From the IMG/VR virus record IMGVR_UViG_3300049048_000052, positions 1-64,000 of that record: a DNA stretch of 64,000 nt. One strand, given 5' to 3'. A model generated the notes under the pieces. The model worked only from the letters and a program-made list of their open reading frames with translations. It was not told the DNA's origin and searched no databases. The position numbers were made by a program, and so were the translations under genes. Below, in pieces: positions 640 to 57,475 of the stretch; within the stretch, counting starts at the first letter, position 1; every line of letters begins with the position of its first letter.

Positions 640-877
640 CTAGTTGTTAACGTAGAGGCTCTTTATCCTCTACTTCTCATAGTTTCCTATGAGTCCAGAC
701 TATATCATAGTAACCTAATGGTTACCGCCCCCGCTCGTGCCAACTTATCCTGTTCTAGGTATTGTTGGTAGTCGTTGAACCTTACTCCCATCCCGGAGAG
801 TCTTGGCTGCTGATTGCCATATCTATGTAGACTTAGGGTCCCAGCAGTTCAAGGGCTTTATACAGAGCCTTAACTTA
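640..877 (-). mobile_element. Group I intron (no internal ORF) in tail tube gene
   Basis: Minus strand has P (GAACTGCTGGGA), Q (AATCAGCAGCC), R (GTTCAACGACTA) and S (GATATAGTC) elements in order. Exon 1 ends in U and pairs with the guide GCTCTGTA (U.G at the splice site). The intron ends in G, and its removal restores the frame. Confidence 0.92.
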
Positions 878-937
878 ACCCTGTAGTGGATCGATACCCA
901 CGTTGTTGACCGGAGCCTTATACAGGTCTAAAGCCAT
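878..937 (-). CDS. Tail tube protein, exon 1 (MALDLYKAPVNNVGIDPLQG)
   Basis: ATG at 937 after AAGGAA SD-like sequence; 20 codons, then an in-frame TAA inside the intron. Confidence 0.85.
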
Positions 938-1031
938 TTTAAATGTTCCTTTTAATAAAGTTAACTATTATATACCAGGGGTATTAGGTATTAGTGTAGA
1001 TAGAACTAGACCTATAACTCTAAATCAATAA

Positions 1032-19600: not shown

Positions 19601-22600
19601 GTATGAAGCGTGCAGCAGCATTGGCTGGTATAGATTATTCTCAGCAGGCTAGAGCAAAAGATGTTAATACATTAGTTGCTAGTATACAAAGTCTAGCTAA
19701 GGAAGCTGAAGCTATTGCAGTACACAGGAAATTAGATAAGAGTGGATATCGTAGGGCACAGCTGATAGGTTCAGGTGGTACCTCAATCATAGATCAGATG
19801 ATGTCCATGATTACAGAGAAGGGATATGCTGATCTACTCTTAGACGTAGTTAGTCATACTAATGGTATGGACTATTACAGTTCTATGTCTGCTGATATAG
19901 AAAAGGTTAAGAAAATGCTTATGGAGCCTTTTCTTACTTTTGGTCAGCATAATATATATGGTTCCTCTCAGTCTTACTTTAGATTGGGAGTAAGGGGTGT
20001 GTCTAATGCACCTCAATATAGGGATGCTATAAGTATGGCTAGGGAGGGTAATCCTATGGCCGCCTATGCACTACCTTCCTTAGCACTAACTTATGGACCT
20101 ACTACCAATCTAAGGGCTAATGGGCTTATTAGAAGTATTGCTGATAAGTCATCTATTAACTTTGGAGTGGGAGAGGGCCTAAGCTTCTTTAACACTCCTA
20201 CTCAAGTCGTGGGTGATGTAACCAGTGCTGAGATATTATCGTTCCTCTCTGTAGGTAGTCTTGTAAGAAGAGAGGAAATAGAGAACTATATTAAGTCTGT
20301 AGATCCTAAGGCTAATACTCAGGCTCTACTTAGTAAGGCATTTGGGGATAGTCAGGAGATGTTCTCCTTCACCTTTGATACGGTTAAGAAGGTAGCACAG
20401 GTACCTCAGAGACTTAAGAATGCTGTAGGTGCTAGACCCTTATACGATATAAGTGAGAATGCTCAGAGGGTATTAGAAGATCCTATGAGTGGTGAGGCAG
20501 CTACCTTAGGTAGAGATTATGTATGGAAGCTAAGGGAAGAGCTAAAGCTTCACTTCCGTAGACAGATAAATATAGACCTTGTAACTGATGAGGTAACTAG
20601 AGCAGCCCTTGAGAGGGAGATGGAAAACAAGATAGATGCTCTAGTACAACCTGATATGGATATCGGGGCTTACTTTGGTGGTCAGATAAGAAGGATACTG
20701 TCTCAACCTTTAGCTGAACTCGTTAAGAGGGAGAGAGATGAGATAGAACAGCTCTTAGGTACTGAGGTTAATACTAGTACTATAGGATCTGAATTACTTA
20801 GAGTAAGAATGCTAAGGGCTGATATGTATGGCAGCTCTTATAGAGGTGTTATAGGAGGATCTAGAAGGCATGGTGCCCCAGTGGCCCTCGTACAGCTAAC
20901 AGGCGGTTACTCTGATTACTTCTATGCTAACCCCATGTTTGGGGGGTCCCAAGGTATGAGACAAGGTCTCTTAGAGAGAGCAGAGAAGAGAGTCAAGGCT
21001 TCTATGTTATCTACTGATTGGCAGGAGAAGACAGGTGTTCTTATTCAGCCTGGTTATACTATTAGACTAGATAAGAAGACTGGTACTGCATCAGTATTTG
21101 ATGAGAGGGGTAATTGGGTAAGGGCTATAGATAGCAGGGATCAGATGGATGCTATTGAGAAAGTAGTAGAGAATACTGATATTAATGGCTTACCCTCCTT
21201 TGCCAACGTACAGGCTACATCTAGTAACAGATTGGGTGAGGATAGTGTTGAACTAATATTAAGATTCGAACAACAGAGTCCTGCCTCTGTTGATAAATAT
21301 CAGATGAACTTCGAAGCCACCTATGTAAGAAGTATTAAACCTGGGGGTGGTCGAAGGGTTGAAGGTAACTGGGCCGGTGCGCTGGTTAAGGGCGTAGCTG
21401 TCTTTACTAGACATGATAATGAGTACTCCTTCTTTGGTGGAATACTGGATCAATTGAATCAAATGCCTACCACAACGTTTGGTGGTCAGTTGGACATAAG
21501 GAATGTATTCGGTCTACTTAGCCCTGCTAACCTTAAGTCCTTTGTTTATGGACATGGTGCTGAACTGCTAACTGATAACCGTAAGAGAACTGGCTTGCTT
21601 AATGCCTATAATGATGCTGCGGTTACCAGTGGGAGTGCTGAAGCTGAGAGAGTAAGTAAGAGATTAGCAGCTGCTATACTCTTAGGTTTTGGTACCTCTA
21701 TGATAGAGAGTAGTGCCGAGGCCAATGCTATTAAGCAGAATCTATATAGGGCCGCAGCTCAGGGGGAATTGGGTGAGTACTTCCAAGGTGTGGCAGCAGC
21801 TACGGGACTGCTAGAGTTTAAGGATGAACGTGGTCAGGTTATGGATGCGGCTAGTGTATTTACTAGTGAGGCGTCCTTCAAGGTTGCTCAGACACCTCTA
21901 CTAGCTGCCATTACATCTGAGGATATAATGCAGGCCATTAATGGATCTGGGGGTAGACTGTTTGATAAGTTAAGCACTGCTATTACTAATGCAGCTAAGG
22001 AGGCTGAGGGTACTGGCTATATGGTAGCTGGAGACTTCAGACATCAACAAGCAGGCATATTACTTACAGCGTTAGATATATTTGATCAGCTATCCGTACA
22101 GGTTGATAGGAAGAGAGGACGTAACCTTGTTACTCTGCCTACTGACTTTAATGTTAAGAATGCATCTGTTAGAGCTCAGCTAGCGGCTATAGTAGGTATG
22201 GGCCTTAATGATATGGAGGATGAGACTAAGGTAGAGAATATACTGGGTAGTATGCTTAGTAAGGCACCAGTGTTAAGACTATTCATGGATCTATCTTTCT
22301 CTCACTCTAAGGAACCTGTAAGTACTAAGATGACCGGTAAGCTTGAAATGCAGCACCTCATTAAGCCCCTACAGATGTTAGCGGGTGAGTTTGCTGATAA
22401 TAAGAGCTTGGATAAGATGAGGGTCACCATAGCCAACATGTTCGCTGCTATTAGCCACGGCTCTCTGTATCAATATGTAGCCGCAGGGGACTTACCTAGT
22501 AAGAATACAATTGTAGATATAACTGATCCCTTTGTCAGGACTCCAATGTTCAAACAGAGAATGTTGGGTATATATGGCACAGGGCTACATACGGATAAGT

Positions 22601-25600
22601 TCGAGCAGCTTAGGAAGGAGTACGGACAATATACTGAGGAACTACAAGTCCTCATAAGAGATAAGACAGTATCAGCTGATAGACATGAGGTCAAGGTCAT
22701 AATGACTAAGCTGGCTACTGTACAGGGTCAACTTTTAGAGCTGGCTAGATATTACCAACTGTTTGAGGATAAACCTGCCTCGGTTGGTATATCTAATGCA
22801 GTAGTAGGGGCCATGAATAATCCTAGATTTGGATTCTTTGTGCCCTACATGGAACCTATCATGTCTGAACATGGCGTCATCCTTAAGGTAGATAAGACTA
22901 GAGGTTTCTATAGCTTTATGCCATCTGGAGATGACATAAGACTAATGGGGGCCCAGTTTGGTAATTATATAGACCGTATAGTTCAAGCAACTATAGTGCT
23001 GCAATCAGGCTTTGCTCCTGGAGGACCCCTAGATGATATGTTTACTCGCATGTCTAAGATTAGGGGAAGTACCCATATAGCTATGAGTAATGAAGAATGG
23101 CAGCATCTGGATAGATTCTATAAGACAGCCCTTGAGATGCCTGCCCTATTAGCTGATGCTGCCTCAGGTACTAGGTTACAAAGAGCAACTGGTGCTGCCA
23201 TACCCTTTAGAGGTGGAGTGAGTACCCCTGCGGCCTCTGGTTTAGTACCTCCTGAAATGGTGGTGCTTGCTAGTGAGACATTAGCTAAACATGGCCTTAG
23301 AGTATCTGAGACTAAATGGAGAATGTTAGAGGATACTGATGCAGAGATGTCCAGAACTCATAGCACTCTCCAGAGTCTTGCTTATGAGTCTATGTCTCAG
23401 GCCGATAAGAACATAATAGAGAATAAGAGAAAGTTCCTAACAGGTCAGAGATTCGCATTAACTGAGGGTTTATCTGAACAGGGTACCAAGGGTCTACTAG
23501 ATAGGGCCCTAAAGGAAAGCCGTGAGCTAGCAGAAGACTATAGCAATGCGATGACCTTTACTGACCTGAAAGAAAGACAGAGACATCTAGGTAAGGTCTT
23601 TGGTAGGGCCGATCGTATGGCTAGACGTTTCAGCACTACTGTCTATGATCTGAATAAGAGAGGGGACTCCTTCGCTCAGCTGGCCGCCATCAGTGAGATG
23701 GAAATATGGAAGTCGCAGGCTAGAATATCTAGTCTAGAGGCACAGAACCAGGTAACTCCATTATCAAGTAAGGCTGCTGAAATACTAGATGCTGAAAGGA
23801 ATCAGCTCCGTATGTTTAAGGAGCTACCCTTCTATGTAACCAACTTTACCTTGGGTAGTGCTAACTCTGCCAGGAAAACTATGGAGGTTAGCCACCTAGC
23901 ACTTGAGGGTAAGCTAAGAGGTAATATTGTTAGAAGCATAATGTCTGCTGATATTACTAAGGAGATATTCGAGCTGGATGCAGATCACAGGACAGACTTC
24001 CTTGATTATAAGTTAACTACTCTAATAGATCATCTGGAGACTGCTAATGCTAAGAGGGATAATCCTGGTCCTCATGTGAAAGAAAGTGTTAGAGCTATGA
24101 GGAGTAGCCGTCTAGGAGGTGAGGCGGATTATAATAATCGTTTAGCTAGTAGGCTCGTAGATATTAGGGATAGGGTTAGAAGGGGTGGTACTAAGACGGC
24201 TGATGTCCTGGCTGAGATCAATGCTGCTTATGCTATGTATGACGTAAGTGGCGTATCATCTGCTATAGGCTTCCGTTCTCCTCCCTTTGGTTCTACTGAG
24301 CCCCAATTACAGATACTAGATGTCCTAAGGGATATAGCGGTAGTGAATGAGTATGCCCAAGGTATTGATGGGGGTAGTGGTAGATTAATCCAATACAGTG
24401 GGGCTGATGAGAGAAATGCATCATTGACCCTACTAAGTCCTATATCTATCCTAACTATGAACTTGGGTGACTTTGATGGTGACCCTTATACATTCATATT
24501 CTCTGAGCTACAAGGGTTAGAGCATAAGGTGATGGAGAAGAAGGATAATATTAAGATGCTCCAGTTTAGAAGGTCTAAGTGGAGTAAGGAACTATCACGC
24601 TTAGAACCAGATACCTTGGATTACGAAGATCTGAAGACTAGGGTTGATAATACTGAGAAACAGATCCTAAAGAATGAGGAGGAGATACCAAGGATCAGAT
24701 TAAAGATTAAGGAGATGGATGAACATCTACAAAGAGATATTATAGATAAGGGTGTGGCCCATAAACAGGTCGCGGCCTATATGGGTATCAATGCTAAATA
24801 CTTATTAACTGAGAGTCAGGGTGGTTATCTGGCTGACTCTGATAAATTAGATGCTAATGTCTTGTTCACCTTTATTGAACAGGGTAGAGGTTTGTATCCT
24901 GGTATAGATGATAAATATAAGAGTATCGATACACTCTACAAAGCCTTAGATCGACTCATAGAACCTACCTCCATGAGTGGGCCTATGAACCTTAATATGC
25001 ACCTATCTAGTATAGAAGCCCTAAAGAGTAGGGCCGCTGAGCTAGCTCAGGATATGAGTGATAACAGTGGTGGGGTATACGAACGTATTATCAATAACAA
25101 TGAGGTAGCTAGCGCGGTATTTGCGGAGTTACAGAACTTTGTTAATACTTATGAGGATTCAACCTCAGTTGAGATTGAGGACTACAAGTCAGGCTTAGCA
25201 GATCAGACTGTCAGCATGTACTATAAGATGCTTGGCACTAATGAGTTCCAGAAGATGATGAAGAGGGCTGGGGGAACTCAGATGGAGCTCTCCACGTATG
25301 ACATGCTAACAAAGGTCTTGGGTAAGGCGGGTGGTGATATCCTTGGTAAGACCTATAACTCTATAGTAGGTACTCTATTCGCTGATAGTCCTATGTTGGC
25401 AGTGGGTCATGTACTGACTAGGAGTGATGAGGTTAGCTCTGGGGTTGAGCAATATATAGATAATCTTATAAATACAGGTAAGTTAAGCGGAGATGAATGG
25501 TCTACCGGGGCCGACTTTATAGAGAATATAAAGACTAGTATGTCTAATGCAGAGCAGCTACAGGGATTCATGAAAGATATCCAGCAGCTACTCAGAGATA

Positions 25601-27786
25601 GTATTAAGTTAAAGGGTGGTACTAATATTCTTAGTGCTTTGAGAGATAAGGCTCAACAATATGAGGATCCCAACCTAGACGATGCAGGTAGAACAAGGGT
25701 TCTAAATGACATTGTTAAGGATATAGGTCCAGGACCTGGTCTCAAGTCATTAATGAGGCTTGATAGCTTTGTTAATAATATTAATGGTAGTATCTCTGAC
25801 TTTGAGTTAGCAGATGAGTTTGGAGTGTCCAAACTCGGGGATGAGTACGCATATATAACAGGAACTCTACAGGCAGCTGATCTTATTAATGAATCAGACC
25901 CCACTAAGGCTTATAGGACTAATAAAATGGTAGCCGCCTATAAGACTGTTAGAGATATCCAGCATATGGTTACTGCTTTTAACTTCGAGAGAGGTAGCAG
26001 TAGCAAGCAGTTCATGGATAACTTTATAAGGGTAGAGGAGAGAAGGGGCCAAAAGGATGTAATACTAGATAAGTTTAGAAATAGGAGTAATGCTGAGTTT
26101 GGTGAGTATAGTAGAGCATTAGCATCTTACAACGATGATGATCTTACTCCTAAGCCTAATGATAGCTATGATGATAGATTAACTGCTTTTGAGCAGAAGT
26201 ATGGAGAGTCTGGGCTGCTATTGTTCGCACATATGTATGAACAAAGCAAGGCTGGAACTAGAGGAGTCTTTGGAGAGTTCGGTCAGAACTTACTAGCCTT
26301 TGCACATAAGGATAGTATCAGGAAGACTCTAACTAATGTTATGGAAGGAAGATCAGAGACTATAGCAATGCCTGCCACTATGGATCAGGATATATTCACC
26401 TCTGATATAACCTTAACCCTAATGAACCTGGCCTCTACTAATAAGCTGGATCCTTCAGCCGCAGCCTTATTCTATCAGAGTATGGAAGGTCTCCTTAAGG
26501 TAGGGGGTATAGCATCAGATCCTAAAGATGTGTTGATGAATATCCTATCCTCTACCACTAGGAACAATAATGGTAATGAGGCTGCTACTAAAATAAGTGC
26601 TCAGATAGGGGCTCTTAATATGTTAGAACAAGAGGGCAGTGAGTTTAGACTTACCTTTAGTCAAGGTGGGCAGGAACATACTGCTATCTATAGCAGCCTC
26701 TTGGATTATCTACAGCAGTCCCTTACTGAAACAAGGGCAGGTCTAGAGAGTAAGATGATCCAAAGCTTCGTGAAGACTATTATTAATGATGGAGTATCTA
26801 GTGGTAGAAAGCCTAAGAATGCTAGAGAGTTCGCTACCTATATTCTTAAACCTAAGGGTTCGGATTCAGATACTGAGCCTGATGAGGCTATGATTACTAA
26901 GATAGTTGAGAATATAGAATCTATGTCCGAAGTAGATTCTATATTTAAGGAGAATGTTAGTACTAAACCTGTTCTAGAAGGCAAATATGCTGAGGTAGCC
27001 CGTAAGAGTATTAGTCGTATGGCTAGTGAGGATAAAGCCAATACTATGGACCTAATACTACCGGCATTCTTAAGTATTATGGGTCAAGCCATTGCTAGTG
27101 GATCTGTTGAACCTGAGGCTTTTCAAGATGTTGTTGGTTCTACGTTAGTGGCCGCAGCATACAGTAGACCTAACTTTGGTTCTAGGACTGCTACTGGTTT
27201 TATGGCTAATGTAGGTATAGGAAGTGCATTCAAATTCAGGATGGCAATTAATGAGGCGGGTGGGGATCCTGGTGAAGGCATAACCAGACTTATAGCTAGA
27301 GAACTAACCTTTAACGCAATAAGCGCTTGGGCTGCACCTAAGCTCACTAACCTAATGACTCAAAAGCTATTCGGAGCTAGACCTCAAACCCTAGATAGGG
27401 ATTACCATGAGGGTAGTAGGAACGTAGCAGGTATGATGAGTGGTGCAGTACTATCAGCCGCACTAGGAGTACTAGGAGGTAACGTAGCCTCTGGTGTTGT
27501 AGGAATGATGAGCACTGTACCTACTGCTAATCTAGTGGATACTGCGCTTGATTATATAGCAGTTAAAGCCAGAGCTATAGGAGCTCAAACGTTCCTAGAG
27601 GAATCTGATGCTATTAATATATTTAATGAGGAAGATGGAGAGTCTGTAGATGCAATATACTCAGATGAACCTATATCTTTCTATGGATCTAATCCTCAAT
27701 CCTTAGCAGAGGCTGTATATACGGATAACACTATGGATACTATTGTGGTGGAGCCCGTCAATTTGTTTGAGGATTATGATTCTTAG
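16633..27786 (+). CDS. Giant 3717-aa protein: tandem PLD domains plus two-barrel RNA polymerase centre (candidate virion RNAP)
   Basis: H339xK341xxxxD346..GSIN and H654xK656..GSSN PLD motifs; FRSPP about 65 aa before MNLGDFDGDP (D2613-D2617, nt 24469-24483); TTG start with GAGGGG SD. Confidence 0.75.
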   Translation: MFSEEEEKRSSLELLMGRLRGEESSDDALSLAVRHHIYYGGGSDSFMARYNRMADENPSDEPRLFGDLSTLSGEFELDENSLNQSIREVTAYSAFSSFDKDMQNVLGNGANALKRLHGRFYFGSKTQDATFASKNVYDTIYRPFSIDADKEGWTIAPESPLHGMREHVLQTIVDADVNSGRGNFVNIRSELNRMVRGNLSINKKNLALIDKNTDERIAGMIGQKTYVNRPGIAPFLSMIQGADTEIVIDTYQFQNKAISDYLYNWVTRKALAGETPRLTIRLAMPRDKGVDSATSYDILGPNLIQILKFKQLKEQLNNDFPDRDWDDLIKVEVESDVHHSKMYFTDRAAAIGSINLTSPVGYNPNQAGSNYEMMRIFHSVAPQASMGDLRSALTDLKIRHTLGLNKEQLREEFLYRQVKDLREQMENRVRGSSMNFTNRRGQLGMGGDIFEHLEKTVEMLDDPRFIGSRLGDIIAGGTKSDKSRARFANRSGRLELHMILDQVMLLQHADGLFNTMVEGEFGRFSDDQLSRMDSTGARRARYKRVQSKVLRALADNRAFIVADARNLREGVIDPLMFGAYDERTGTNRGPLIAREVWEQHDYDIAKLARKATGSSVDERVLSLSNQFGFSNETSLQVLALASGNIRAAGVPRQHVKAYSLMARLDDRKGAPNLVALSSYMGSSNLGLYSSPMRGIDDLGSSMDSDHLSHEIGLTMMMGQVRSMMDFNTTSEYALSSSQEYVEMQRYFLPNWSLAMSQLGVSAIENKNFMEVRSRSLWEGNVDSKSLVGLRDGIHNMMRSMKIDESVYSIGTVTDGSSQKVIGLELSLDARALAGFGKGFEGLHGESRRISYRFTTLKGAGADPMVYAIDQGKIIGRSLFVNNSDVELPILDRTIQSKSSTVLNSIDNTLAFIATLAAEVTHRALIDKPRKTFESLDGKAQRVAIGDYLARLAGIRGGQLEGLYNTDVLTDEHALKLAEEINKRLLYGNESMKRAAALAGIDYSQQARAKDVNTLVASIQSLAKEAEAIAVHRKLDKSGYRRAQLIGSGGTSIIDQMMSMITEKGYADLLLDVVSHTNGMDYYSSMSADIEKVKKMLMEPFLTFGQHNIYGSSQSYFRLGVRGVSNAPQYRDAISMAREGNPMAAYALPSLALTYGPTTNLRANGLIRSIADKSSINFGVGEGLSFFNTPTQVVGDVTSAEILSFLSVGSLVRREEIENYIKSVDPKANTQALLSKAFGDSQEMFSFTFDTVKKVAQVPQRLKNAVGARPLYDISENAQRVLEDPMSGEAATLGRDYVWKLREELKLHFRRQINIDLVTDEVTRAALEREMENKIDALVQPDMDIGAYFGGQIRRILSQPLAELVKRERDEIEQLLGTEVNTSTIGSELLRVRMLRADMYGSSYRGVIGGSRRHGAPVALVQLTGGYSDYFYANPMFGGSQGMRQGLLERAEKRVKASMLSTDWQEKTGVLIQPGYTIRLDKKTGTASVFDERGNWVRAIDSRDQMDAIEKVVENTDINGLPSFANVQATSSNRLGEDSVELILRFEQQSPASVDKYQMNFEATYVRSIKPGGGRRVEGNWAGALVKGVAVFTRHDNEYSFFGGILDQLNQMPTTTFGGQLDIRNVFGLLSPANLKSFVYGHGAELLTDNRKRTGLLNAYNDAAVTSGSAEAERVSKRLAAAILLGFGTSMIESSAEANAIKQNLYRAAAQGELGEYFQGVAAATGLLEFKDERGQVMDAASVFTSEASFKVAQTPLLAAITSEDIMQAINGSGGRLFDKLSTAITNAAKEAEGTGYMVAGDFRHQQAGILLTALDIFDQLSVQVDRKRGRNLVTLPTDFNVKNASVRAQLAAIVGMGLNDMEDETKVENILGSMLSKAPVLRLFMDLSFSHSKEPVSTKMTGKLEMQHLIKPLQMLAGEFADNKSLDKMRVTIANMFAAISHGSLYQYVAAGDLPSKNTIVDITDPFVRTPMFKQRMLGIYGTGLHTDKFEQLRKEYGQYTEELQVLIRDKTVSADRHEVKVIMTKLATVQGQLLELARYYQLFEDKPASVGISNAVVGAMNNPRFGFFVPYMEPIMSEHGVILKVDKTRGFYSFMPSGDDIRLMGAQFGNYIDRIVQATIVLQSGFAPGGPLDDMFTRMSKIRGSTHIAMSNEEWQHLDRFYKTALEMPALLADAASGTRLQRATGAAIPFRGGVSTPAASGLVPPEMVVLASETLAKHGLRVSETKWRMLEDTDAEMSRTHSTLQSLAYESMSQADKNIIENKRKFLTGQRFALTEGLSEQGTKGLLDRALKESRELAEDYSNAMTFTDLKERQRHLGKVFGRADRMARRFSTTVYDLNKRGDSFAQLAAISEMEIWKSQARISSLEAQNQVTPLSSKAAEILDAERNQLRMFKELPFYVTNFTLGSANSARKTMEVSHLALEGKLRGNIVRSIMSADITKEIFELDADHRTDFLDYKLTTLIDHLETANAKRDNPGPHVKESVRAMRSSRLGGEADYNNRLASRLVDIRDRVRRGGTKTADVLAEINAAYAMYDVSGVSSAIGFRSPPFGSTEPQLQILDVLRDIAVVNEYAQGIDGGSGRLIQYSGADERNASLTLLSPISILTMNLGDFDGDPYTFIFSELQGLEHKVMEKKDNIKMLQFRRSKWSKELSRLEPDTLDYEDLKTRVDNTEKQILKNEEEIPRIRLKIKEMDEHLQRDIIDKGVAHKQVAAYMGINAKYLLTESQGGYLADSDKLDANVLFTFIEQGRGLYPGIDDKYKSIDTLYKALDRLIEPTSMSGPMNLNMHLSSIEALKSRAAELAQDMSDNSGGVYERIINNNEVASAVFAELQNFVNTYEDSTSVEIEDYKSGLADQTVSMYYKMLGTNEFQKMMKRAGGTQMELSTYDMLTKVLGKAGGDILGKTYNSIVGTLFADSPMLAVGHVLTRSDEVSSGVEQYIDNLINTGKLSGDEWSTGADFIENIKTSMSNAEQLQGFMKDIQQLLRDSIKLKGGTNILSALRDKAQQYEDPNLDDAGRTRVLNDIVKDIGPGPGLKSLMRLDSFVNNINGSISDFELADEFGVSKLGDEYAYITGTLQAADLINESDPTKAYRTNKMVAAYKTVRDIQHMVTAFNFERGSSSKQFMDNFIRVEERRGQKDVILDKFRNRSNAEFGEYSRALASYNDDDLTPKPNDSYDDRLTAFEQKYGESGLLLFAHMYEQSKAGTRGVFGEFGQNLLAFAHKDSIRKTLTNVMEGRSETIAMPATMDQDIFTSDITLTLMNLASTNKLDPSAAALFYQSMEGLLKVGGIASDPKDVLMNILSSTTRNNNGNEAATKISAQIGALNMLEQEGSEFRLTFSQGGQEHTAIYSSLLDYLQQSLTETRAGLESKMIQSFVKTIINDGVSSGRKPKNAREFATYILKPKGSDSDTEPDEAMITKIVENIESMSEVDSIFKENVSTKPVLEGKYAEVARKSISRMASEDKANTMDLILPAFLSIMGQAIASGSVEPEAFQDVVGSTLVAAAYSRPNFGSRTATGFMANVGIGSAFKFRMAINEAGGDPGEGITRLIARELTFNAISAWAAPKLTNLMTQKLFGARPQTLDRDYHEGSRNVAGMMSGAVLSAALGVLGGNVASGVVGMMSTVPTANLVDTALDYIAVKARAIGAQTFLEESDAINIFNEEDGESVDAIYSDEPISFYGSNPQSLAEAVYTDNTMDTIVVEPVNLFEDYDS

Positions 27787-50462: not shown

Positions 50463-50548
50463 GCAACCACGGTCCAAACGGTAGGGACACTTAGGGAGGT
50501 ACTATGTACTGACTCTAGGAGATCTGGGTTCGATTCCCAGTGGTTGCA
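50463..50548 (+). tRNA. tRNA-like gene with 20-nt expanded anticodon loop
   Basis: GCAACCA/TGGTTGC acceptor, GTCC/GGAC D stem, CTGGG-TTCGATT-CCCAG T arm; anticodon not assignable. Confidence 0.7.
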
Positions 50549-50857: not shown

Positions 50858-50929
50858 ACAGGATTAGTTCAGTGTTAGCAGAACATCCCCTCTAAAGGGA
50901 CAAGATAGGTTCAATTCCTATGTTCTGTT
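50858..50929 (+). tRNA. tRNA with CUA (amber) anticodon, atypical
   Basis: TCCC-CTCTAAA-GGGA anticodon arm (4 bp), ATAGG-TTCAATT-CCTAT T arm; D loop lacks GG. Confidence 0.65.
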
Positions 50930-50940
50930 ATACCCTACTC

Positions 50941-51009
50941 ACAGACCTAACTCAAGTGGAAGAGTACCCACATTGTCGGGTAGTATGGGTTCGAATCCCA
51001 TGGTCTATA
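50941..51009 (+). tRNA. Degenerate tRNA-like gene
   Basis: ACTC/GAGT D arm and ATGGG-TTCGAAT-CCCAT T arm intact; anticodon arm irregular. Confidence 0.6.
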
Positions 51010-51042
51010 ATTGTCCACTTAAATTGATTAAAGGAGTCTGTC

Positions 51043-51501
51043 ATGGTTACTACTCAAGAATTAGAGGCCGCAGGAGTGCAGGTTCACACTGCAGAGGCTA
51101 AAGTCCTCAATACCTGCCCTCATAATATCAACATCTTCCCTGAAGATGCCTTCATTAACCTGAAGCAGATCAACCCAACAACCTGGGTGGCCGATGGGGT
51201 TAAGGAAGAAGCACCGCTGTTGGCTTTCTATCCTTCAAGTGGTTCCAGTCTGCGCATTGGAGTAGAGTCCAAACCTATCGGCTCCATTGCTGGTGTTCCC
51301 TGTTACCGGGCAGTATATGGTGAGCTCTCTGGTCTCCCTGAGGAAGAGTATGACGTGATTATCACATCTCTTCCTGCGGTCAGCAATGCTAAGCTCAAGG
51401 GTCTGGCGATCGCTGAGAAGCTATGCTCACCTCATCAAGTGGTGCGTCTCTCAACTGATACCAGTGTCATCCTCGGCTGTACTGGGTTACAGTTCCAGTA
51501 A
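51043..51501 (+). CDS. Conserved-looking phage protein (NTCPHNINI..GLP..VR..ILGCTGL)
   Basis: AGGAG SD; the pattern recalls a widespread uncharacterised phage family. Confidence 0.65.
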   Translation: MVTTQELEAAGVQVHTAEAKVLNTCPHNINIFPEDAFINLKQINPTTWVADGVKEEAPLLAFYPSSGSSLRIGVESKPIGSIAGVPCYRAVYGELSGLPEEEYDVIITSLPAVSNAKLKGLAIAEKLCSPHQVVRLSTDTSVILGCTGLQFQ

Positions 51502-51519
51502 TTAGCCCTTAAGTGGGTA

Positions 51520-51591
51520 GCAGATATAGCTCAAAGGTAGAGCATATGGACGTTTGTTCATAAGATGTAGGTTCGACCCCTACTATCTGCT
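51520..51591 (+). tRNA. tRNA-like gene with 8-nt anticodon loop (Asn GTT-derived?)
   Basis: GCAGATA/TATCTGC acceptor, GCTC-AAAGGTA-GAGC D arm, loop ACGTTTGT, GTAGG-TTCGACC-CCTAC T arm. Confidence 0.7.
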
Positions 51592-51623
51592 TTGTTAAAC
51601 ATATTGATTGAAGGGAGTCCGTT

Positions 51624-51941
51624 ATGAAGGTTGATTGTTTACCTGGGTTCACATTAAGGGATGCTGTAGCTGGAGAGGATCAGTCCTTTAGCGTAGAGCA
51701 AGCTATGAAGGTGCTACATCCTCGTATATTTGAGCTATTGGTACAGAGTGTAGAACACACAAGGAAGAGGGCCCTGGAGAATGAGGTGAACTGGGCAGGC
51801 CTAAGCCCGTATGTGAGAGTGGAGATGCTTAAGGGTTTCCTTGCCTCACGTATCTCTGTCCTATTAGATATGGGAGTGGATCCTAGTGGGGCCCTGCCTA
51901 TCATCTGCTTCGTTGTGGCCTGGGTTGAGGATGTGGAGTAA
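51624..51941 (+). CDS. Hypothetical protein
   Basis: GGGAG SD. Confidence 0.6.
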   Translation: MKVDCLPGFTLRDAVAGEDQSFSVEQAMKVLHPRIFELLVQSVEHTRKRALENEVNWAGLSPYVRVEMLKGFLASRISVLLDMGVDPSGALPIICFVVAWVEDVE

Positions 51942-51979
51942 TCCACCTATTGTTAATAGCTATATACAAGGAGATGACC

Positions 51980-52222
51980 ATGAACCTAGAAGCACGATAT
52001 CCACAACACTGCCCTCATGATGGGGCAGTGATTGATCCTGATGGATCAAAATGTTATCAGGGTGAGGAGATCTGGGATATCTTCCCAGCTGATAATCCTA
52101 TGGCTGACTCATTGTACCAAGCGTCCTCCGCCTGGTGTGTAAGGAATAATGTGGCCATGCTGGTGGCTGATGATTATTCAAGTCCTGAGGACTATGGGTA
52201 TCCTGATTCTGACCTTCGTTGA
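51980..52222 (+). CDS. Hypothetical acidic protein
   Basis: AGGAG SD. Confidence 0.6.
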   Translation: MNLEARYPQHCPHDGAVIDPDGSKCYQGEEIWDIFPADNPMADSLYQASSAWCVRNNVAMLVADDYSSPEDYGYPDSDLR

Positions 52223-52230
52223 GGTATAGT

Positions 52231-52422
52231 ATGCCAACGTTTGAGGAATTCAAAGCAATGGTGAGGGCCCACTTGAAACAGGAGGGTCTATGGTCTGAGG
52301 ATATGGAGGCTGGCTTCAGTGAAGATAGTCAGGATGTAGGCTACCGGTGCTACCAACTAAGGTGGGGTAATATCAATTTGGCCTATAACCAAGTCTCCGA
52401 TAAGATAGACTTTGTGGAGTAG
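52231..52422 (+). CDS. Small acidic protein, paralogue 1
   Basis: FEEFKAMVR..EGLWSEDME..FSE shared with 52425. Confidence 0.65.
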   Translation: MPTFEEFKAMVRAHLKQEGLWSEDMEAGFSEDSQDVGYRCYQLRWGNINLAYNQVSDKIDFVE

Positions 52423-52424
52423 CC

Positions 52425-52631
52425 ATGCTTAGCTACGAGGACTTTCAGTCTATTGTCCGTCAGGATATGATGGACCAGGGTAGATGGAGTGAGGATCTAG
52501 AGTCTTGTTTCAGCGATCTCAGTGATATGGTAGGGCATCCATCCTATCAGTTCTATGCGCCCAATGTAGCATCAGCTATGTATGGGTATGACCGAGGTAT
52601 ATGGTTGTATGGTGAACCTGGAGGAGATTGA
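52425..52631 (+). CDS. Small acidic protein, paralogue 2
   Basis: YEDFQSIVR..QGRWSEDLE..FSD. Confidence 0.65.
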   Translation: MLSYEDFQSIVRQDMMDQGRWSEDLESCFSDLSDMVGHPSYQFYAPNVASAMYGYDRGIWLYGEPGGD

Positions 52632-52996
52632 TTATGCGTTTGTTCCTTTGTTTAGTGTTGGGTGCCCTGTGTGCTCCTATGTTACCTGTTGCACCTACAT
52701 TAGCCGGTGCCTTCCCCTGTGAGACTAACAAGACCCTAAAGCAGTTCAACTATGTGTGGGTGGGTCTGGGTACTAGTAAATGGGAGAGGGTAGAGGCTGC
52801 GGTGATGAAGGCCTTTGATAGACGCTTCCCTGATGCCACTAACCGACCCAGTGTGGCCTACTGTTCTCGTACAGTAGACGGACTAGCATTCTATAACTTT
52901 GCCAGTGCAGCAGAGCGAGTAGAATGGGAGTCCATTGCTCATCGGGCTGCTAATAGTGTTGAGCAGGGTACACCTGTTCTCAACATTCGTCATTAG
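52628..52996 (+). CDS. Secreted/signal-peptide protein
   Basis: MRLFLCLVLGALCAPMLPVAPTLA signal-like N-terminus. Confidence 0.6.
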   Translation: MIMRLFLCLVLGALCAPMLPVAPTLAGAFPCETNKTLKQFNYVWVGLGTSKWERVEAAVMKAFDRRFPDATNRPSVAYCSRTVDGLAFYNFASAAERVEWESIAHRAANSVEQGTPVLNIRH

Positions 52997-53053
52997 TTTG
53001 GGGGGAGGCCCCTTGGTCTCCTTATTCATATTAGATATACATAGGGGAAACTA

Positions 53054-53350
53054 ATGGAAAGTCCAGCAAGTATTACTGTCTCTGCCTCCTGGCTCTTCAG
53101 GAGCAAAGCTGTCAGCATGTGGAGTACTGACTTCGAAGAGACTGCTGAGTATGTCATGCTTAGCTCTAGTAAGGGGGTATTCCAGTTACTCAAAGATGGT
53201 AAGATCTGCGATGTAGAAGAAGTATTCAATAGCCGTCCTGGAACTGCCCTGTATAAGGGTAGTGTCTATAAGATTAAGTCTGGGTACTTCTTTGTTGGAG
53301 TTGCAGAGGGGGAGGGTATTGAGACCCCTGTTCTATTGATTGTGGAGTAA
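53054..53350 (+). CDS. Hypothetical protein
   Basis: ORF with GGGG SD-like sequence. Confidence 0.55.
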   Translation: MESPASITVSASWLFRSKAVSMWSTDFEETAEYVMLSSSKGVFQLLKDGKICDVEEVFNSRPGTALYKGSVYKIKSGYFFVGVAEGEGIETPVLLIVE

Positions 53351-53357
53351 TCCACGG

Positions 53358-53432
53358 GCCCACCATGCATATATGGATAATGCACTACCTCTGAACAAGG
53401 TAGGTTTTCAGGTTCGAATCCTGAGGTGGGCA
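53358..53432 (+). tRNA. tRNA-Phe(GAA)-like, atypical (C37, 6-bp anticodon stem)
   Basis: GCCCACC/GGTGGGC acceptor, CTACCT-CTGAACA-AGGTAG, TCAGG-TTCGAAT-CCTGA. Confidence 0.75.
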
Positions 53433-53980
53433 TAGACTGATAGGGAGGAACGGGCCTTGAGCCAACGTATTCCTATTAGTTGAGGGTGGTAAGGACCCTA
53501 CGATGGTTCTTATTGCTCAAGCCTAGGTCGTAGTGACGTACTTCCTAGCTAGGCCCAGTAAAGTTTGCTAGGTTTGATAAATGGGTCGAAGTACAAACCT
53601 AACTGCAGGGATATGCCGCCCTGTTAGTCTTTGACGGGGGAAACCCGCATTGAGTAGTACAACCAAGTAGGGAGCACCACCCCCTAGGAGGAATAGGCAA
53701 GGTATACGTCTGCTCATATCTATTGTGGTGATAGGTATGGGCGCATGGTCCCTACGTTAAGGGGTACCACTCTCTTGATGAAGAGACGTTTCCTAGTTCG
53801 TAAACTAGGTGGTGGAGTGCCTTCCGTGGGGACGCTGTTCTCATTGGCTAGTGCCCCTCAGGTCTACTATGGGAAACCATAGGGTAGCTATAACCTTGAC
53901 GATACTCGAAAGAGTTGGGGCAGGGCTATGGACTTATTAGCTACAAGTACAGAGGGGAAGGGGTCATAGCCTTCCCCTAT
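53433..53980 (+). ncRNA. Candidate large structured ncRNA (about 550 nt) downstream of tRNA
   Basis: ORF-free, GC-richer; about a dozen hairpins including GAAA-capped stems and a terminal AGGGGAAGG/CCTTCCCCT stem. Confidence 0.65.
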
Positions 53981-54110
53981 AATTAAAACTTATAAATAAT
54001 TAGAAAGTCTTTGTCTTGACCCTATAGGAAAAAGTTGCCTTTATCTCTTAAATGAGGTAAATCATAGGTAACTATACCTAATAAATGAGCTCCATCAATA
54101 AGTAGAGCTT

Positions 54111-54467
54111 ATGGATATGAAGGATAGAGACAATGATAGGGTGAGTCAGGAATGGGCCACAAGGTTAGTACTATTGAGAGATGGTATTAGTATTAGGCCC
54201 ATAGATGTATTAACCGGACCCAATAGGGAATGGAATCCTGCTGTATGGAGAGCACTGGAGAATAGGATAGATGGTAGTGGTGTGGTCCTAATGGACTGTG
54301 TCGTATCGTTTATGGATGCCTGGTGTGAGAAGTATAGTGAGGATGAGGTGGCTAACCTAAGAGCTATGGGGACTGTGATGACCCCTACTTTAGGTGAAGG
54401 ATGGTATGAGTGCCAACTATGGTGCCATCTCATCTTGAAGGCGGGTGATGTATTTAAGTTCCTATAG
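54111..54467 (+). CDS. Hypothetical protein
   Basis: ORF track. Confidence 0.55.
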   Translation: MDMKDRDNDRVSQEWATRLVLLRDGISIRPIDVLTGPNREWNPAVWRALENRIDGSGVVLMDCVVSFMDAWCEKYSEDEVANLRAMGTVMTPTLGEGWYECQLWCHLILKAGDVFKFL

Positions 54468-54597
54468 ATAGAGAGGGATTGGTTGAGATAGTGTATCTTA
54501 TTTAGGATGATGGGGTGTATCCCTCCACTTCATCATCCTAATTCTTCTTTAAATTGAACTTTACCCTTTTAACCTATTGATTGATGGAGAAGTACGT

Positions 54598-54855
54598 ATG
54601 AGCAGTAAGACTCAGAGTGCAAAACTAGACGCTAGTAACTATGAGCTAGTAATGAACTCTTGGGTGCCAGGGCAGCCTGCCACTCGTGTATGGAAGGGAC
54701 CCGATGGTACTGAGGTAGAGATTCAGCAACAACTGAATCAGGTCCAGGTGAAAGTTAATGGTAATAAACTCAGTATCCCTACTCGTGTGACGACTGAGTT
54801 ACCAGAGCTTATGAGATCTTACAAAGCAGCATTTGAGAATGCCCTGGGGGATTAA
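54598..54855 (+). CDS. Hypothetical protein
   Basis: ATG after GGAG. Confidence 0.55.
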   Translation: MSSKTQSAKLDASNYELVMNSWVPGQPATRVWKGPDGTEVEIQQQLNQVQVKVNGNKLSIPTRVTTELPELMRSYKAAFENALGD

Positions 54856-54941
54856 TGGTGGTAGCAAGACCAGTTCTAAGGGGGCGGCCCCCTGATCATA
54901 CTCCTGAGCCCCCTCGTATTTTACAGGGGTTCAGTAGAGAT

Positions 54942-55451
54942 ATGAACCTATTTACTAGTATCTTCATTGATGCTGGTAATATGTTTCATGCTCAGCAGAA
55001 GCAGGGATGGTTCTTCGATCCTAAGAAGATCATTAAGTACGCTGTACCTGACGAACATTATCTAGTGAATGCTTGGTGGCATACTGCCATTAAGGATGAA
55101 CAGGATAACATTCTGTTCAGGGATGCTTTAACCTCCATGGGTTATAGTGTTATGACTAGACCCCTTAAGGAGTACTATGACCCTCGTCGTGGTATCACTA
55201 CCCAACACGGCAATTGCGATGTGGATATCGTAATTGATATGGTGAATACATGGGGGCAATATCAACATGCGGTGGTCTTTACAGGTGATGGTGACTTCCT
55301 TTATGCATTTGAGCAGATGCATGAGAGGAACATAAAGGTAACGGTGGTAGGTGCAGAGGGTATGATATCTAGGGACCTACGGAGTGTGCCCTGGATTAAC
55401 ATTGTATACCTGGACCAAATAAAGGAGCATATTATCAAGATTCGGTACTAA
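54942..55451 (+). CDS. NYN-domain (LabA/DUF88-like) protein
   Basis: IFIDAGNM, CDVDIVIDM, VVFTGDGDF, VTVVGAEGMISRDLR motifs; WFFDP..LKEYYD is typical of cyanobacterial LabA-family proteins. Confidence 0.88.
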   Translation: MNLFTSIFIDAGNMFHAQQKQGWFFDPKKIIKYAVPDEHYLVNAWWHTAIKDEQDNILFRDALTSMGYSVMTRPLKEYYDPRRGITTQHGNCDVDIVIDMVNTWGQYQHAVVFTGDGDFLYAFEQMHERNIKVTVVGAEGMISRDLRSVPWINIVYLDQIKEHIIKIRY

Positions 55452-55659
55452 GGCTGGAGGGGGTAGTTACCCCCTTCATACTTGTTGTCTACTTAATTGA
55501 ATAACCATGGTGGTAGGTAAACCACCTAAGAGAAAGCTTCCTGGGGGTCTCTGCCTCATTAGTGGTGATCATAGTCACCATAAGCTCTTAGCCGGTGTGT
55601 TGAGAGGTTAACAGAGGGCAACTCAAACAAACCCTAGTCAATTAAAAGAGGACAAGACA

Positions 55660-56289
55660 ATGACGAACCAAATGCCTGCACAACAAGCTGTACAGAACGT
55701 TGGCTACACCAACGAGTTCGATAGCCTGGACAACTATGCCCCCGGTCAGATCTTCCGTGTGGATGCCTATCTGATTGATACCAAAGGTGATGCTGCGAGC
55801 AACAGTATCCTGCGGATGTATCCTGTGGCTCCCTCGCACATCGATCCCCGGTTGGTCCTGTCCGTTGTGCCTATCTACATCACCTGCACCGTTGAAGAAT
55901 GGCGTCAACGCAATAACTATGAGGACGGGGATACTATCTCCCTCTTCGTACGTAAGGGCACCATCAATGCCCGTGTTGACCTGGCTTCTCCTGCTGCCGT
56001 CCAGAAGGAAATGAAGCGTCTGGGTTACACCGACGTCAATCAGTTCCCCTACTACCCCGTGCGTATCAAACCTCAGAATGAGGAGACCAAAGGCATGACC
56101 GAGGAAGAACTGAAGGTCCGTGCTTACACTGCGGTGAACGGTAACACTGTTCGTACTGCTCAGCGGCAGGGTCTGAAGGGTGAACAACTGGTGGCTGCGG
56201 TGGCTCAGCGGGATACTGTGGCTGCCCAAGAGAAGGGTGTCAAGGCTGCACTGCTTGGTGTGATGAACCTCGCTAAGTCGATGTTCTAA
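55660..56289 (+). CDS. Highly expressed hypothetical protein, possibly OB-fold
   Basis: Extreme host-like codon bias; beta-rich core; GAGGA SD. Confidence 0.7.
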   Translation: MTNQMPAQQAVQNVGYTNEFDSLDNYAPGQIFRVDAYLIDTKGDAASNSILRMYPVAPSHIDPRLVLSVVPIYITCTVEEWRQRNNYEDGDTISLFVRKGTINARVDLASPAAVQKEMKRLGYTDVNQFPYYPVRIKPQNEETKGMTEEELKVRAYTAVNGNTVRTAQRQGLKGEQLVAAVAQRDTVAAQEKGVKAALLGVMNLAKSMF

Positions 56290-56354
56290 CGGTTAGGTAA
56301 ATAGATGGGGGCCCTTCAGCCTCCATCTATTTATTCTAATTAACTGGATTGACA

Positions 56355-56723
56355 ACAATGATTGACGTAAGAAACGTAGAGACCACTGGCACGATTAAAG
56401 AAGAGTATGAGTACTACGTAAGATGTAGACTCTTATTTCCTGTACTCAGGTCAATGGTTGAGGATTGGGAGGCCCTACAGGATGAGATGGTAATCATCAT
56501 GGAGAGCCAGGGTATATATGGATTAATTATAGAAATGAGTAGGCCCACTAGGGCTGAGATCTCCAAACACAGGGAGGTATGTAAGTTATTAGTAAATTAT
56601 ATACAAGCTGGTGACCCTACCTTAGAGGTCCTATTAGATGATGATCTAGTAGAAGAGGCAGAATCATTTGCCTCCACTCTAATGGTAGATCGTTTGGAGA
56701 GACTCCTACAAAAGAACATATAG
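56355..56723 (+). CDS. Hypothetical protein
   Basis: ORF track. Confidence 0.55.
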   Translation, partial: TMIDVRNVETTGTIKEEYEYYVRCRLLFPVLRSMVEDWEALQDEMVIIMESQGIYGLIIEMSRPTRAEISKHREVCKLLVNYIQAGDPTLEVLLDDDLVEEAESFASTLMVDRLERLLQKNI

Positions 56724-56755
56724 TTCAAAACTGCATTGAAGGGAGTTCCTGTACT

Positions 56756-57475
56756 ATGAACGAGATACCATTGGGTACGGATGCTAAGGGGGTGTATTAC
56801 TGGTTAGTTCAGACTAAACAGGGTGTTAAGGTTATGGCTAGAGACCGTAAGGGTAATGTGAAGGGGGCTGAGCATGTGCCCACTGAGTTACTCAGTGGAG
56901 GCTTAAGGCTACAGGATCTAACTACTAGGGCACAAACTCTGTGTGACTCTCTCTATGAGAGTGACGACTTCTATAGCATGGCCAAGGAGGTCCTAAAACT
57001 AGATACAGCAATCCGTGCTGAGCTAGGGTTAGATCGTGCACCTAATATCAGGGATACCTATAAAGCGGCCCTTGAGAAGGTACGAACTGTAGCCATGCAC
57101 CTTCTGGGTATTGCTATCACTAAGGGTATTGCTAATGAGACGGGCTGCGGGGATATGGAGAAGATGCTGAGGTGTCATAAGAGTCTATTGGCACTCACAG
57201 ATAATCTAAAGGGCTTCTCTCCTCCCTTAGACCCAGATTTGATTCAAAAGTATCTGGCATTCTTATCCGGTATTCGGGATAAGATTATCGACTGGGTTGA
57301 CATACCTCTGTCCCCAGATGAGAAAGTACAGATAAGGGAGATACTGAAGCAGTACATCAGACTGGTAGGTGTCCTTGCCCAAAGGAACAATGCGGTGAAT
57401 CAACACCAGGTTGAGTACCGTTGGGTTAAGGAATACATAGAGAACGGTGGGGATATTAACCAGATCCCCTTGTAA
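56756..57475 (+). CDS. Hypothetical helical protein
   Basis: GGGAG SD. Confidence 0.6.
   Translation: MNEIPLGTDAKGVYYWLVQTKQGVKVMARDRKGNVKGAEHVPTELLSGGLRLQDLTTRAQTLCDSLYESDDFYSMAKEVLKLDTAIRAELGLDRAPNIRDTYKAALEKVRTVAMHLLGIAITKGIANETGCGDMEKMLRCHKSLLALTDNLKGFSPPLDPDLIQKYLAFLSGIRDKIIDWVDIPLSPDEKVQIREILKQYIRLVGVLAQRNNAVNQHQVEYRWVKEYIENGGDINQIPL

What the first reader, a model, noticed from the sequence alone, without database searches (positions are those of the whole stretch)
53433..53980. About 550-nt ornate non-coding RNA directly downstream of a tRNA
Seen: no ORF; stems CTGATAGGGA/TTCCTATTAG, AGGGT/ACCCT, CTACGA/TCGTAG, TAGGTTTG/CAAACCTA, CGGG-GGAAA-CCCG, CATATCTAT/ATAGGTATG, CTCTT/AAGAG, CCTAGTT-CGTA-AACTAGG, CTATGG-GAAA-CCATAG, ACTC-GAAA-GAGT and a terminal stem. 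Established: GOLLD and ROOL RNAs are large phage RNAs often next to tRNA genes. Inference: a member of those classes or a new large ncRNA.
Basis: partly seen in the sequence, partly recalled or inferred. Interest (0 to 1): 0.75.

Follow-up and report, generated by a model that had tools for sequence, protein, structure and literature searches.

The report
Orphan structured RNA candidate beside phage tRNA-like gene
A 550-base stretch of a giant soil phage genome (a distant relative of cyanophages) has no gene, folds unusually well and directly follows a tRNA-like element, so it is probably a large non-coding RNA; it matches no known RNA family and no relative was found, so it cannot yet be proven.

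Summary
The region is real and non-coding. Window 53434-54110 is the longest stretch of the 251,780-bp phage genome without any ORF of 50 aa or more. It has weak codon periodicity. The + strand folds at -219 kcal/mol (z -4.2 to -5.7, no shuffle as good) into a well-defined ensemble. It directly follows an ARAGORN-called tRNA (GAA). That element is atypical and the Rfam tRNA model does not match it.

A signal found before many genes of this phage (ATTGATTG plus a hairpin) lies just upstream. The tRNA-like element and the RNA therefore look like one expression unit.

It is not ROOL, GOLLD, RNase P, tmRNA or a group I/II intron. No Rfam 15 family matches even at E 10, although the same library finds four group I introns in this genome.

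No homologue was found in any collection searched, so covariation cannot be tested. No RNA run was listed.

The thermodynamic support is moderate. Local 150-nt windows fold no better than neighbouring genes.

Best reading, about 45%: an orphan large structured RNA released from a tRNA-like handle, resembling ROOL/GOLLD in context only. A spacer with no RNA function is the main rival.

The parts
53335..53342 (+). ATTGATTG motif, a 'unit start' signal of this phage (promoter or processing site; function inferred)
   Evidence: 29 copies on + against 7 on - in the genome. It is about 5-fold enriched in intergenic DNA and usually lies 16-35 nt before an ATG.
53342..53355 (+). Hairpin GTGGA-GTAA-TCCAC that starts at the motif's last G. 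Its GNRA loop holds the stop codon of the upstream ORF.
   Evidence: -8.7 kcal/mol. In 18 of 29 motif copies a hairpin starts at the motif's final TG, against 21% in controls (p 2e-6).
53358..53432 (+). tRNA-like element (anticodon GAA) with a 7-bp acceptor stem and a canonical T arm. It also has a 6-bp anticodon stem, C at position 37, A at position 8 and no encoded CCA.
   Evidence: ARAGORN; cloverleaf fold with z -4.65; not matched by Rfam RF00005 at E<=10.
53433..53453 (+). 5' strand of the predicted closing helices, pairing with 53835-53841 and 53933-53943
Evidence: Mean pair probability 0.77-0.86.
53454..53703 (+). Domain 1: a long interrupted rod (53454-53520 paired with 53650-53703) with a branched tip at 53523-53647
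   Evidence: Helix probabilities 0.9-1.0; inverted repeats I1 and I2.
53711..53743 (+). Domain 2: a 14-bp hairpin
   Evidence: P 0.98; z -4.3 together with domain 3.
53748..53833 (+). Domain 3: a 9-bp stem leading to a three-way junction with hairpins 53772-53785 and 53792-53809
   Evidence: P 0.95-1.0 for the outer stem and both hairpins; basis of model R1.
53845..53928 (+). Domain 4: a branched stem with two GAAA-capped hairpins (53867-53882 and 53904-53915)
   Evidence: folded alone, the 150-nt piece 53836-53985 that holds it has a weaker z of -2.2.
53953..53978 (+). 3' terminal 9-bp G+C-rich hairpin followed by TATAATTAAAA (no T run): an end-protecting hairpin or weak terminator
   Evidence: P 0.99; not listed among the terminator-like sites.
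53979..54110 (+). A+T-rich spacer (GC 0.37) before the next ORF
54111..54467 (+). ORF of 118 aa with no homologue; possibly in the same transcript
   Evidence: There is no ATTGATTG motif before it.
54502..54541 (+). Strong terminator-like hairpin with a T-rich tail, the likely end of the unit; the next ATTGATTG follows at 54576
53054..53350 (+). Upstream ORF of 98 aa
   Evidence: It resembles a repeat unit of a 3130-aa protein (16 matched stretches).

Best explanation
The stretch 53433-53985 is a gene for a large (about 550 nt) structured non-coding RNA of a jumbo myophage distantly related to the Microcystis Ma-LMM01 and Microcoleus cyanophages. It would be transcribed on the + strand in a unit that starts at the phage's ATTGATTG-hairpin signal (53335-53355). 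That unit reads first through a tRNA-like element and then through the RNA.

The host's tRNA-processing enzymes (RNase P at the 5' side; RNase Z at the 3' side, since no CCA is encoded) would cut out the tRNA-like element. This would give the large RNA a precise 5' end at 53433. The G+C-rich hairpin at 53953-53978 would protect or define its 3' end.

The RNA is predicted to fold into four domains closed by 5'-3' pairing: a rod, a hairpin, a three-way junction and a branched domain with two GAAA loops. By analogy with ROOL and GOLLD, the other large RNAs of phage tRNA islands, it would act as an RNA-only or RNA-scaffold particle during infection.

Shown: it is non-coding, it folds better than chance, and the gene-start motif and the tRNA-like element sit directly upstream. 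Inferred: transcription, processing, domain architecture and function.
For: It is the longest ORF-free stretch of the genome. It has no protein signal, low period-3 signal, and the genome uses the standard genetic code. MFE z is -4.2 to -5.7 with no shuffle as good. The ensemble is far better defined than in shuffles, and the region ranks second of 41 genome windows. The + strand folds better than the - strand (-219 against -180 kcal/mol). Sub-domain 53708-53836 alone has z -4.3 with 0 of 200 shuffles as good. Two GAAA-capped hairpins put it in the top 6%. The tRNA-like cloverleaf abuts it with no gap. The ATTGATTG+hairpin signal shared with many genes lies 3 nt (two bases) upstream of the tRNA-like element, and none lies inside the RNA. 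An independent assembly (Logan contig, depth 69) reproduces the sequence with no differences. The published context of ROOL and GOLLD is the same: phages, tRNA islands, downstream of a tRNA.
Against: No homologue was found anywhere searched, so not one base pair has covariation support. Searches covered GenBank phages, IMG/VR relatives, pattern scans, and 401 cyanobacterial genomes by BLAST plus 151 by model. No RNA run was listed. Local 150-nt stability is no better than in neighbouring genes, and the hairpin count is ordinary. GC content (0.49) is like that of the surrounding 50-54 kb. The 3' hairpin lacks a T run. The locus lies in a hypervariable region of ORFans where junk DNA is plausible.
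Confidence: 0.45

Rival explanations
1. It is a spacer with no RNA-level function: decayed remains of a gene or mobile element in a hypervariable ORFan and tRNA region. Its good fold would come from chance long-range complementarity and G+U-rich composition.
For: It is a singleton with no relative in any collection searched. Its neighbours are ORFans too. The region is not shared with the closest phages. Local z-scores and hairpin counts are ordinary. One of 40 control windows is as extreme.
Against: The phage is densely coded (88% in long frames), and this is its longest ORF-free stretch. Global z is -4 to -6 and the ensemble is well defined. No trace of a protein remains. The element sits exactly between a gene-start signal plus tRNA-like element and a terminal hairpin.
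Confidence: 0.3
2. It is a long structured 5' leader (cis-regulatory or stabilising) of the mRNA for ORF 54111-54467, left after the tRNA-like element is cut off. It would not be a free-standing RNA.
For: No ATTGATTG signal and no convincing promoter lies between the RNA and the ORF. The first strong terminator-like site on the + strand is at 54502-54541, after the ORF. The 3' hairpin of the RNA has no T run.
Against: A 680-nt leader for a 118-aa ORFan would be very unusual. A strong hairpin and a 130-nt A+T-rich spacer separate the two. No riboswitch or leader family matches.
Confidence: 0.12
3. It is a degenerate or atypical intron (group I or II), or another mobile RNA element, in a genome rich in introns.
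For: The genome holds at least four group I introns. Two of them abut weak tRNA matches, suggesting intron-split tRNA genes.
Against: The group I and II models give nothing here at E<=10, while they score 54-92 bits on the real introns. The tRNA-like element is uninterrupted and the flanks show no split gene. There is no GUGYG start or domain V.
Confidence: 0.05
4. It is a very divergent member of a known large RNA family (ROOL, GOLLD, RNase P, tmRNA) that the covariance models miss.
For: Its size (553 nt against 574 model positions for ROOL) and its context fit.
Against: No local match to any of 4227 families at E<=10 in a 1-kb search with lax filters. ROOL alone matches nothing at E<=10.
Confidence: 0.03
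5. It is a DNA-level element (replication origin or packaging site), or a gene read with a reassigned stop codon.
For: An amber-suppressor-type tRNA (anticodon CTA) lies 2.5 kb upstream. One minus-strand frame of 53433-54110 has 9 TAG and 2 TAA stops and no TGA.
Against: TAG ends 112 of 323 long frames and the standard code gives 88% coverage. That minus frame would need 8 TAG codons in 184. There are no iterons or direct repeats. Cumulative GC skew has no turn here.
Confidence: 0.02

Closest known systems
ROOL RNA (Rfam RF03087)
   Same: It is encoded by phages and prophages, often near tRNA islands. It is about 570-660 nt, has many stems with GNRA loops, and no protein partner is known. The candidate is 553 nt, lies in a phage tRNA island and directly follows a tRNA-like gene.
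   Different: There is no match to the ROOL covariance model at E<=10. ROOL's P1-P19 stems and pseudoknots rest on covariation over more than 1,500 sequences, whereas this RNA has no known relative. The host range differs: ROOL comes mainly from Lactobacillales and rumen samples, and this phage is cyanophage-like from soil.
GOLLD RNA (Rfam)
   Same: It is a phage or prophage RNA near tRNA islands. The example studied by cryo-EM lies downstream of a tRNA-Met, and tRNAs can sit within its linker.
   Different: GOLLD is usually over 800 nt with a universally conserved 3' half. No Rfam family matches here.
Stable RNAs co-transcribed with phage tRNA clusters (T4 species 1 and 2 RNAs, rnaC/rnaD) and tRNA-like processing handles (mascRNA of MALAT1): from my own knowledge, not tested
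   Same: A non-tRNA stable RNA is made from the same precursor as tRNAs, and its ends are set by tRNA-processing enzymes.
   Different: The T4 RNAs are about 140 nt. In MALAT1 the tRNA-like element is at the 3' end. No processing data exist for this locus.
Group I introns of the same genome
   Same: They are structured RNAs of similar size, on the + strand, some next to tRNA sequences.
   Different: Those score 54-92 bits with RF00028 and this scores nothing. It interrupts no gene.

Membership tests
ROOL (RF03087) | Match to the family covariance model (gathering score 99.1 bits) | tested here: not met
   No match at E<=10 in the whole genome or in the 1-kb search of all families. The control genomes did not ring either, so one search is the main test.
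ROOL (RF03087) | Phage or prophage location near a tRNA island; length about 570-660 nt | tested here: met
   The jumbo phage carries five tRNA calls within 50.8-58.1 kb. The RNA is 553 nt and directly follows one of them.
ROOL (RF03087) | Conserved stems P1-P19 and pseudoknots supported by covariation | not testable with these tools
   No homologue was found, so no alignment can be made.
GOLLD | Match to the Rfam model; conserved 3' half; usually more than 800 nt | tested here: not met
   No Rfam family matches at E<=10. Length is 553 nt. GOLLD's profile is in Rfam. I did not search its accession separately.
tRNA (for the element at 53358-53432) | Cloverleaf with 7-bp acceptor stem, D arm with GG, and T arm with a TTCGAAT loop | tested here: met
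   ARAGORN call and cloverleaf MFE with z -4.65.
tRNA (for the element at 53358-53432) | Match to Rfam RF00005; canonical U8, purine 37 and 5-bp anticodon stem | tested here: not met
   It is not among 25 matches at E<=10 in the genome and not listed. The sequence shows A8, C37 and a 6-bp anticodon stem.
Group I / group II introns | Match to RF00028, RF00029 or the D1-D4 models; interrupts a gene | tested here: not met
   Nothing at E<=10 here, while four introns elsewhere score 54-92 bits. RF01998 (a group II D1-D4 model) matches only at 55159-55209, at E 8.6.
RNase P RNA / tmRNA | Match to the Rfam models; a tag reading frame for tmRNA | tested here: not met
   No match. ARAGORN finds no tmRNA here.
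Y RNA-like (YrlA) with tRNA-like module | Ro60 (TROVE) and often RtcB encoded nearby | tested here: not met
   No TROVE or RtcB in the genome.
Functional structured ncRNA (general) | Covariation among homologues; a stable transcript | not testable with these tools
   There are no homologues. The only run holding the sequence is the DNA source sample, and no RNA run was listed.

The most novel reading that the evidence does not exclude
It is the founding member of a new class of large ornate phage RNA, made as a fusion with an aberrant tRNA-like handle that host tRNA-processing enzymes cut off. It would be a cyanophage-lineage counterpart of ROOL/GOLLD with an unrelated fold, possibly also self-assembling.
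Probability: 0.3. Interest if true: 0.7.

Novelty: new variant of a known kind. Interest (0 to 1): 0.4.

Why it matters
ROOL and GOLLD show that phages place large, elaborately folded RNAs of unknown function in their tRNA islands, and that these RNAs can self-assemble into cages. A third, unrelated RNA of the same size and context, from a different phage lineage with a probable cyanobacterial host, would suggest that 'large RNA next to phage tRNAs' is a recurrent solution rather than two isolated families. It would also give a new fold for structural study. The tRNA-like element fused to its 5' end suggests a testable way of making its end. As a singleton without expression data, its present value is that of a lead.

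Tried and rejected
**Known families**
- Rfam 15 at gathering scores and at E<=10, and ROOL searched alone. Nothing matched.
- I wrongly took RF01998 for GOLLD. It is a group II D1-D4 model and gave only E 8.6 noise elsewhere.

**Homologues by DNA similarity**
- blastn against 50,697 GenBank phages.
- BLAST, nhmmer and model R1 against four IMG/VR relatives, Microcoleus phage My-WqHQDG and the phage's own genome.
- BLAST in 401 cyanobacterial genomes and R1 in 151 genomes of the order of a Microcoleus genome.

**Homologues through neighbouring genes**
- The 98-aa, 118-aa, NYN, 152-aa and 1613-aa proteins have no usable relatives in IMG/VR, JGI metagenomes or the 5.8-billion-protein set.

**Pattern scans**
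- tRNA-like T arm and acceptor.
- The repeated GGAGGAA motif.
- Purine/pyrimidine hybrid patterns for domain 3, domain 4 and the tRNA-like element. All were empty.
- A pure R/Y pattern is not accepted by the tool.

**Strain variants**
- Only the source contig was laid in the source sample.

**Other ideas rejected**
- Internal duplication of two halves: the alignment score is no better than shuffles.
- Stop-codon reassignment.
- CTAG enrichment: top 2.4% of windows only, and the genome is CTAG-rich overall.
- Y RNA/Ro60 idea.
- A 1.46-kb apparent gap at 102.5-104 kb as a second large RNA: it holds a chain of small ORFs.
- The 686-nt gap of relative G002: it is an A+T-rich array of repeats, not a homologue.

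Full report
**What the window is.** The window is the first 64 kb of a 251,780-bp IMG/VR virus record that CheckV rates complete. Only one public run holds the target sequence, a soil metagenome that is probably its source. An independent Logan assembly of that run reproduces 51000-56900 without a single difference at depth 69. The sequence is therefore not an assembly artefact. The window encodes tail sheath, major capsid and Mu-type portal proteins. The capsid protein is 46-49% identical to those of Microcoleus phage My-WqHQDG and the Microcystis Ma-LMM01/MaMV group, and 50-64% identical to eight IMG/VR contigs. The host is therefore probably a cyanobacterium; this is an inference. These relatives share only the structural module (0-30 kb) with this phage. 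Nothing from 47-64 kb is shared.

**The observation.** The stretch 53433-53985 has 11-21 stop codons in every frame. Its longest open pieces match nothing in Pfam or PHROGs. With the spacer that follows, it forms the longest part of the genome without an ORF of 50 aa or more on either strand: 53434-54110, 677 nt. The only stretch of equal size holds four tRNA genes. Codon periodicity is in the lowest 6% of genome windows. The genome uses the standard code: TAG ends 112 of 323 long frames. The amber-suppressor-type tRNA 2.5 kb upstream therefore does not rescue a hidden gene.

The + strand folds at -219 kcal/mol, with z -4.2, -5.4 and -5.7, and no shuffle folds as well. Fifteen coding control windows range from +1.3 to -2.9. 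The ensemble is much better defined than in shuffles: diversity 69 against 150+-35, and 42% against 13% low-entropy positions. The region ranks second of 41 evenly spaced genome windows on all three measures.

**Limits of that evidence.** Sliding 150-nt windows inside the region are no more stable than those in the neighbouring genes. The number of local hairpins is ordinary, and two GNRA-capped hairpins put it only in the top 6%. Several other intergenic stretches of this phage have stronger z-scores because of long terminator hairpins. They are replaced by a long interrupted helix, 53454-53520 with 53650-53703 (P 0.9-1.0). The stems from 53711 onward are strongly supported. The predicted architecture has four domains closed by 5'-3' pairing, followed by a terminal hairpin at 53953-78. 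The domains are a rod, a 14-bp hairpin, a three-way junction (53748-53833) and a branched domain with two GAAA loops. Without covariation this architecture remains a prediction.

**The 'tRNA'.** ARAGORN calls tRNA-Phe(GAA) at 53358-53432, and the cloverleaf is thermodynamically strong (z -4.65). The Rfam tRNA model does not match it at E<=10, although it finds 25 other places in this genome. The sequence shows a 6-bp anticodon stem, C at position 37, A at position 8 and no encoded CCA. I therefore call it a tRNA-like element. It may be a functional but aberrant tRNA, or mainly a processing handle.

**A gene-start signal.** Looking for intergenic motifs, I found ATTGATTG 29 times on the + strand against 7 on the - strand. 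It is about 5-fold enriched in intergenic DNA and usually lies 16-35 nt before a start codon. In 18 of 29 copies a hairpin begins exactly at its last TG, against 21% in controls (p 2e-6). One copy, with the strongest hairpin of all (-8.7 kcal/mol, GNRA loop), lies at 53335-53355, immediately before the tRNA-like element. A one-mismatch variant precedes tRNA-Met at 57971. No copy lies inside the RNA or before ORF 54111-54467. The next copy is at 54576, just after a strong terminator-like hairpin at 54502-54541. The likely unit is therefore: signal, tRNA-like element, large RNA, perhaps ORF118, then terminator. This raises the chance that the stretch is transcribed. It also opens the rival reading that it is a long leader.

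**Known families.** No Rfam 15 family reaches its gathering score here. None matches at E<=10 in a 1-kb search with lax filters. ROOL searched alone over the genome gives nothing. The same library finds four group I introns in this genome at 54-92 bits. A group I origin is therefore unlikely. No Ro60 or RtcB gene is present, which excludes a Y-RNA-type system. According to the cryo-EM paper, ROOL and GOLLD are phage and prophage RNAs often found near tRNA islands, and the GOLLD example studied lies downstream of a tRNA-Met. The candidate shares that context and ROOL's size, but not its sequence or modelled structure.

**Search for relatives.** Nothing was found by any of these routes:
- blastn against GenBank phages;
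- BLAST, nhmmer and a covariance model of 53708-53836 (R1) against the phage's own genome, four IMG/VR relatives and My-WqHQDG;
- BLAST in 401 cyanobacterial genomes and R1 in 151;
- the neighbouring proteins, which are themselves without relatives.

No strain variant is present in the source sample, and no RNA run was listed. These searches are far from exhaustive for a diverged RNA, because the collections can only be scanned with exact patterns. 'Not found' here does not mean 'absent'.

**Verdict.** The stretch is truly non-coding and folds better than chance. It is placed like an RNA gene, between a gene-start signal plus tRNA-like element and a terminal hairpin. It is not a member of any described family. 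The most likely reading (about 0.45) is an orphan large structured RNA released from a tRNA-like handle, analogous in context to ROOL and GOLLD. A spacer without RNA function (0.30) and a long leader (0.12) remain serious rivals. Nothing here can establish function. Interest is moderate (0.4). If homologues with covariation or a discrete transcript were found, it would rise substantially.

Noticed in passing
window 53335-53355, and 28 other + strand copies genome-wide (e.g. window 48321, 51603, 54576, 58047, 61067): The motif ATTGATTG is followed in 18 of 29 copies by a hairpin that starts at its last TG. It is strongly + strand biased, enriched in intergenic DNA and lies 16-35 nt before start codons. 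It is a candidate phage promoter or RNA-processing signal. It is also over-represented in the closest relative G002 (10 + 5 copies against 2 expected per strand).
   Followed up: partly
window 676-968 (-); L038:1510-1742; L036:7487-7728; L035:17479-18155: There are four group I introns in one phage genome (Rfam 54-92 bits). Two of them (genome 120479-121155 and 130487-130728) end where weak tRNA matches begin (121148-121218 and 130743-130800), which suggests tRNA genes split by group I introns, as in cyanobacteria.
   Followed up: partly
window 50463-50548, 50858-50929, 50941-51009, 51519-51592: This is a cluster of unusual tRNAs. One has anticodon CTA (amber-suppressor type). ARAGORN gives two an undefined two-base anticodon, although Rfam scores them 38-57 bits. 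One is found only by Rfam (50463-50548, 86 nt). The genome nevertheless uses TAG as a normal stop.
   Followed up: partly
L036:9310-9626 (genome 132310-132626): ARAGORN calls a permuted tmRNA (tag ATNNIVPFSRVSSIVV) directly after tRNA-Met at 132233-132309. Rfam gives no tmRNA match at gathering score. This is a second case of a structured stretch abutting a tRNA.
   Followed up: no
L035:9396-9567 (genome 112396-112567): An Rfam tRNA match spans 172 nt, i.e. a tRNA gene with an insertion of about 100 nt (a possible small intron).
   Followed up: no
L026:10296-10565 (relative G004): A HEARO RNA (the IsrB-type omega RNA, by my own knowledge) at 123.7 bits in a related IMG/VR phage contig.
   Followed up: no
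L014:14009-14694 (relative G002): A 686-nt A+T-rich ORF-free stretch with about five tandem copies of a roughly 45-nt unit and very strong folding on the - strand (z -13). It is a candidate replication origin or regulatory array and is not related to the target.
   Followed up: partly
window 54855-55451: A NYN-domain (PIN-like ribonuclease) protein lies 0.9 kb downstream of the RNA (Pfam E 4e-22). It has no close relative in 5.8 billion proteins.
   Followed up: partly
window 53054-53350: The 98-aa ORF upstream of the tRNA-like element resembles a repeat unit found 16 times in a 3130-aa protein (E 2e-17).
   Followed up: no
window 55660-56289: An ORF of 209 aa with GC 0.53-0.56 in a genome of 0.426, with a fully overlapping 195-aa ORF on the other strand. 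It has no Pfam or PHROG match and may be a recent acquisition.
   Followed up: no
window 16633-27786: A giant ORF of 3717 aa, conserved at about 24-27% identity in all four related contigs.
   Followed up: no
whole genome: There is strong CpG depletion (observed/expected 0.38; CGCG 0.14 per kb), while CTAG is not depleted (6 per kb).
   Followed up: no
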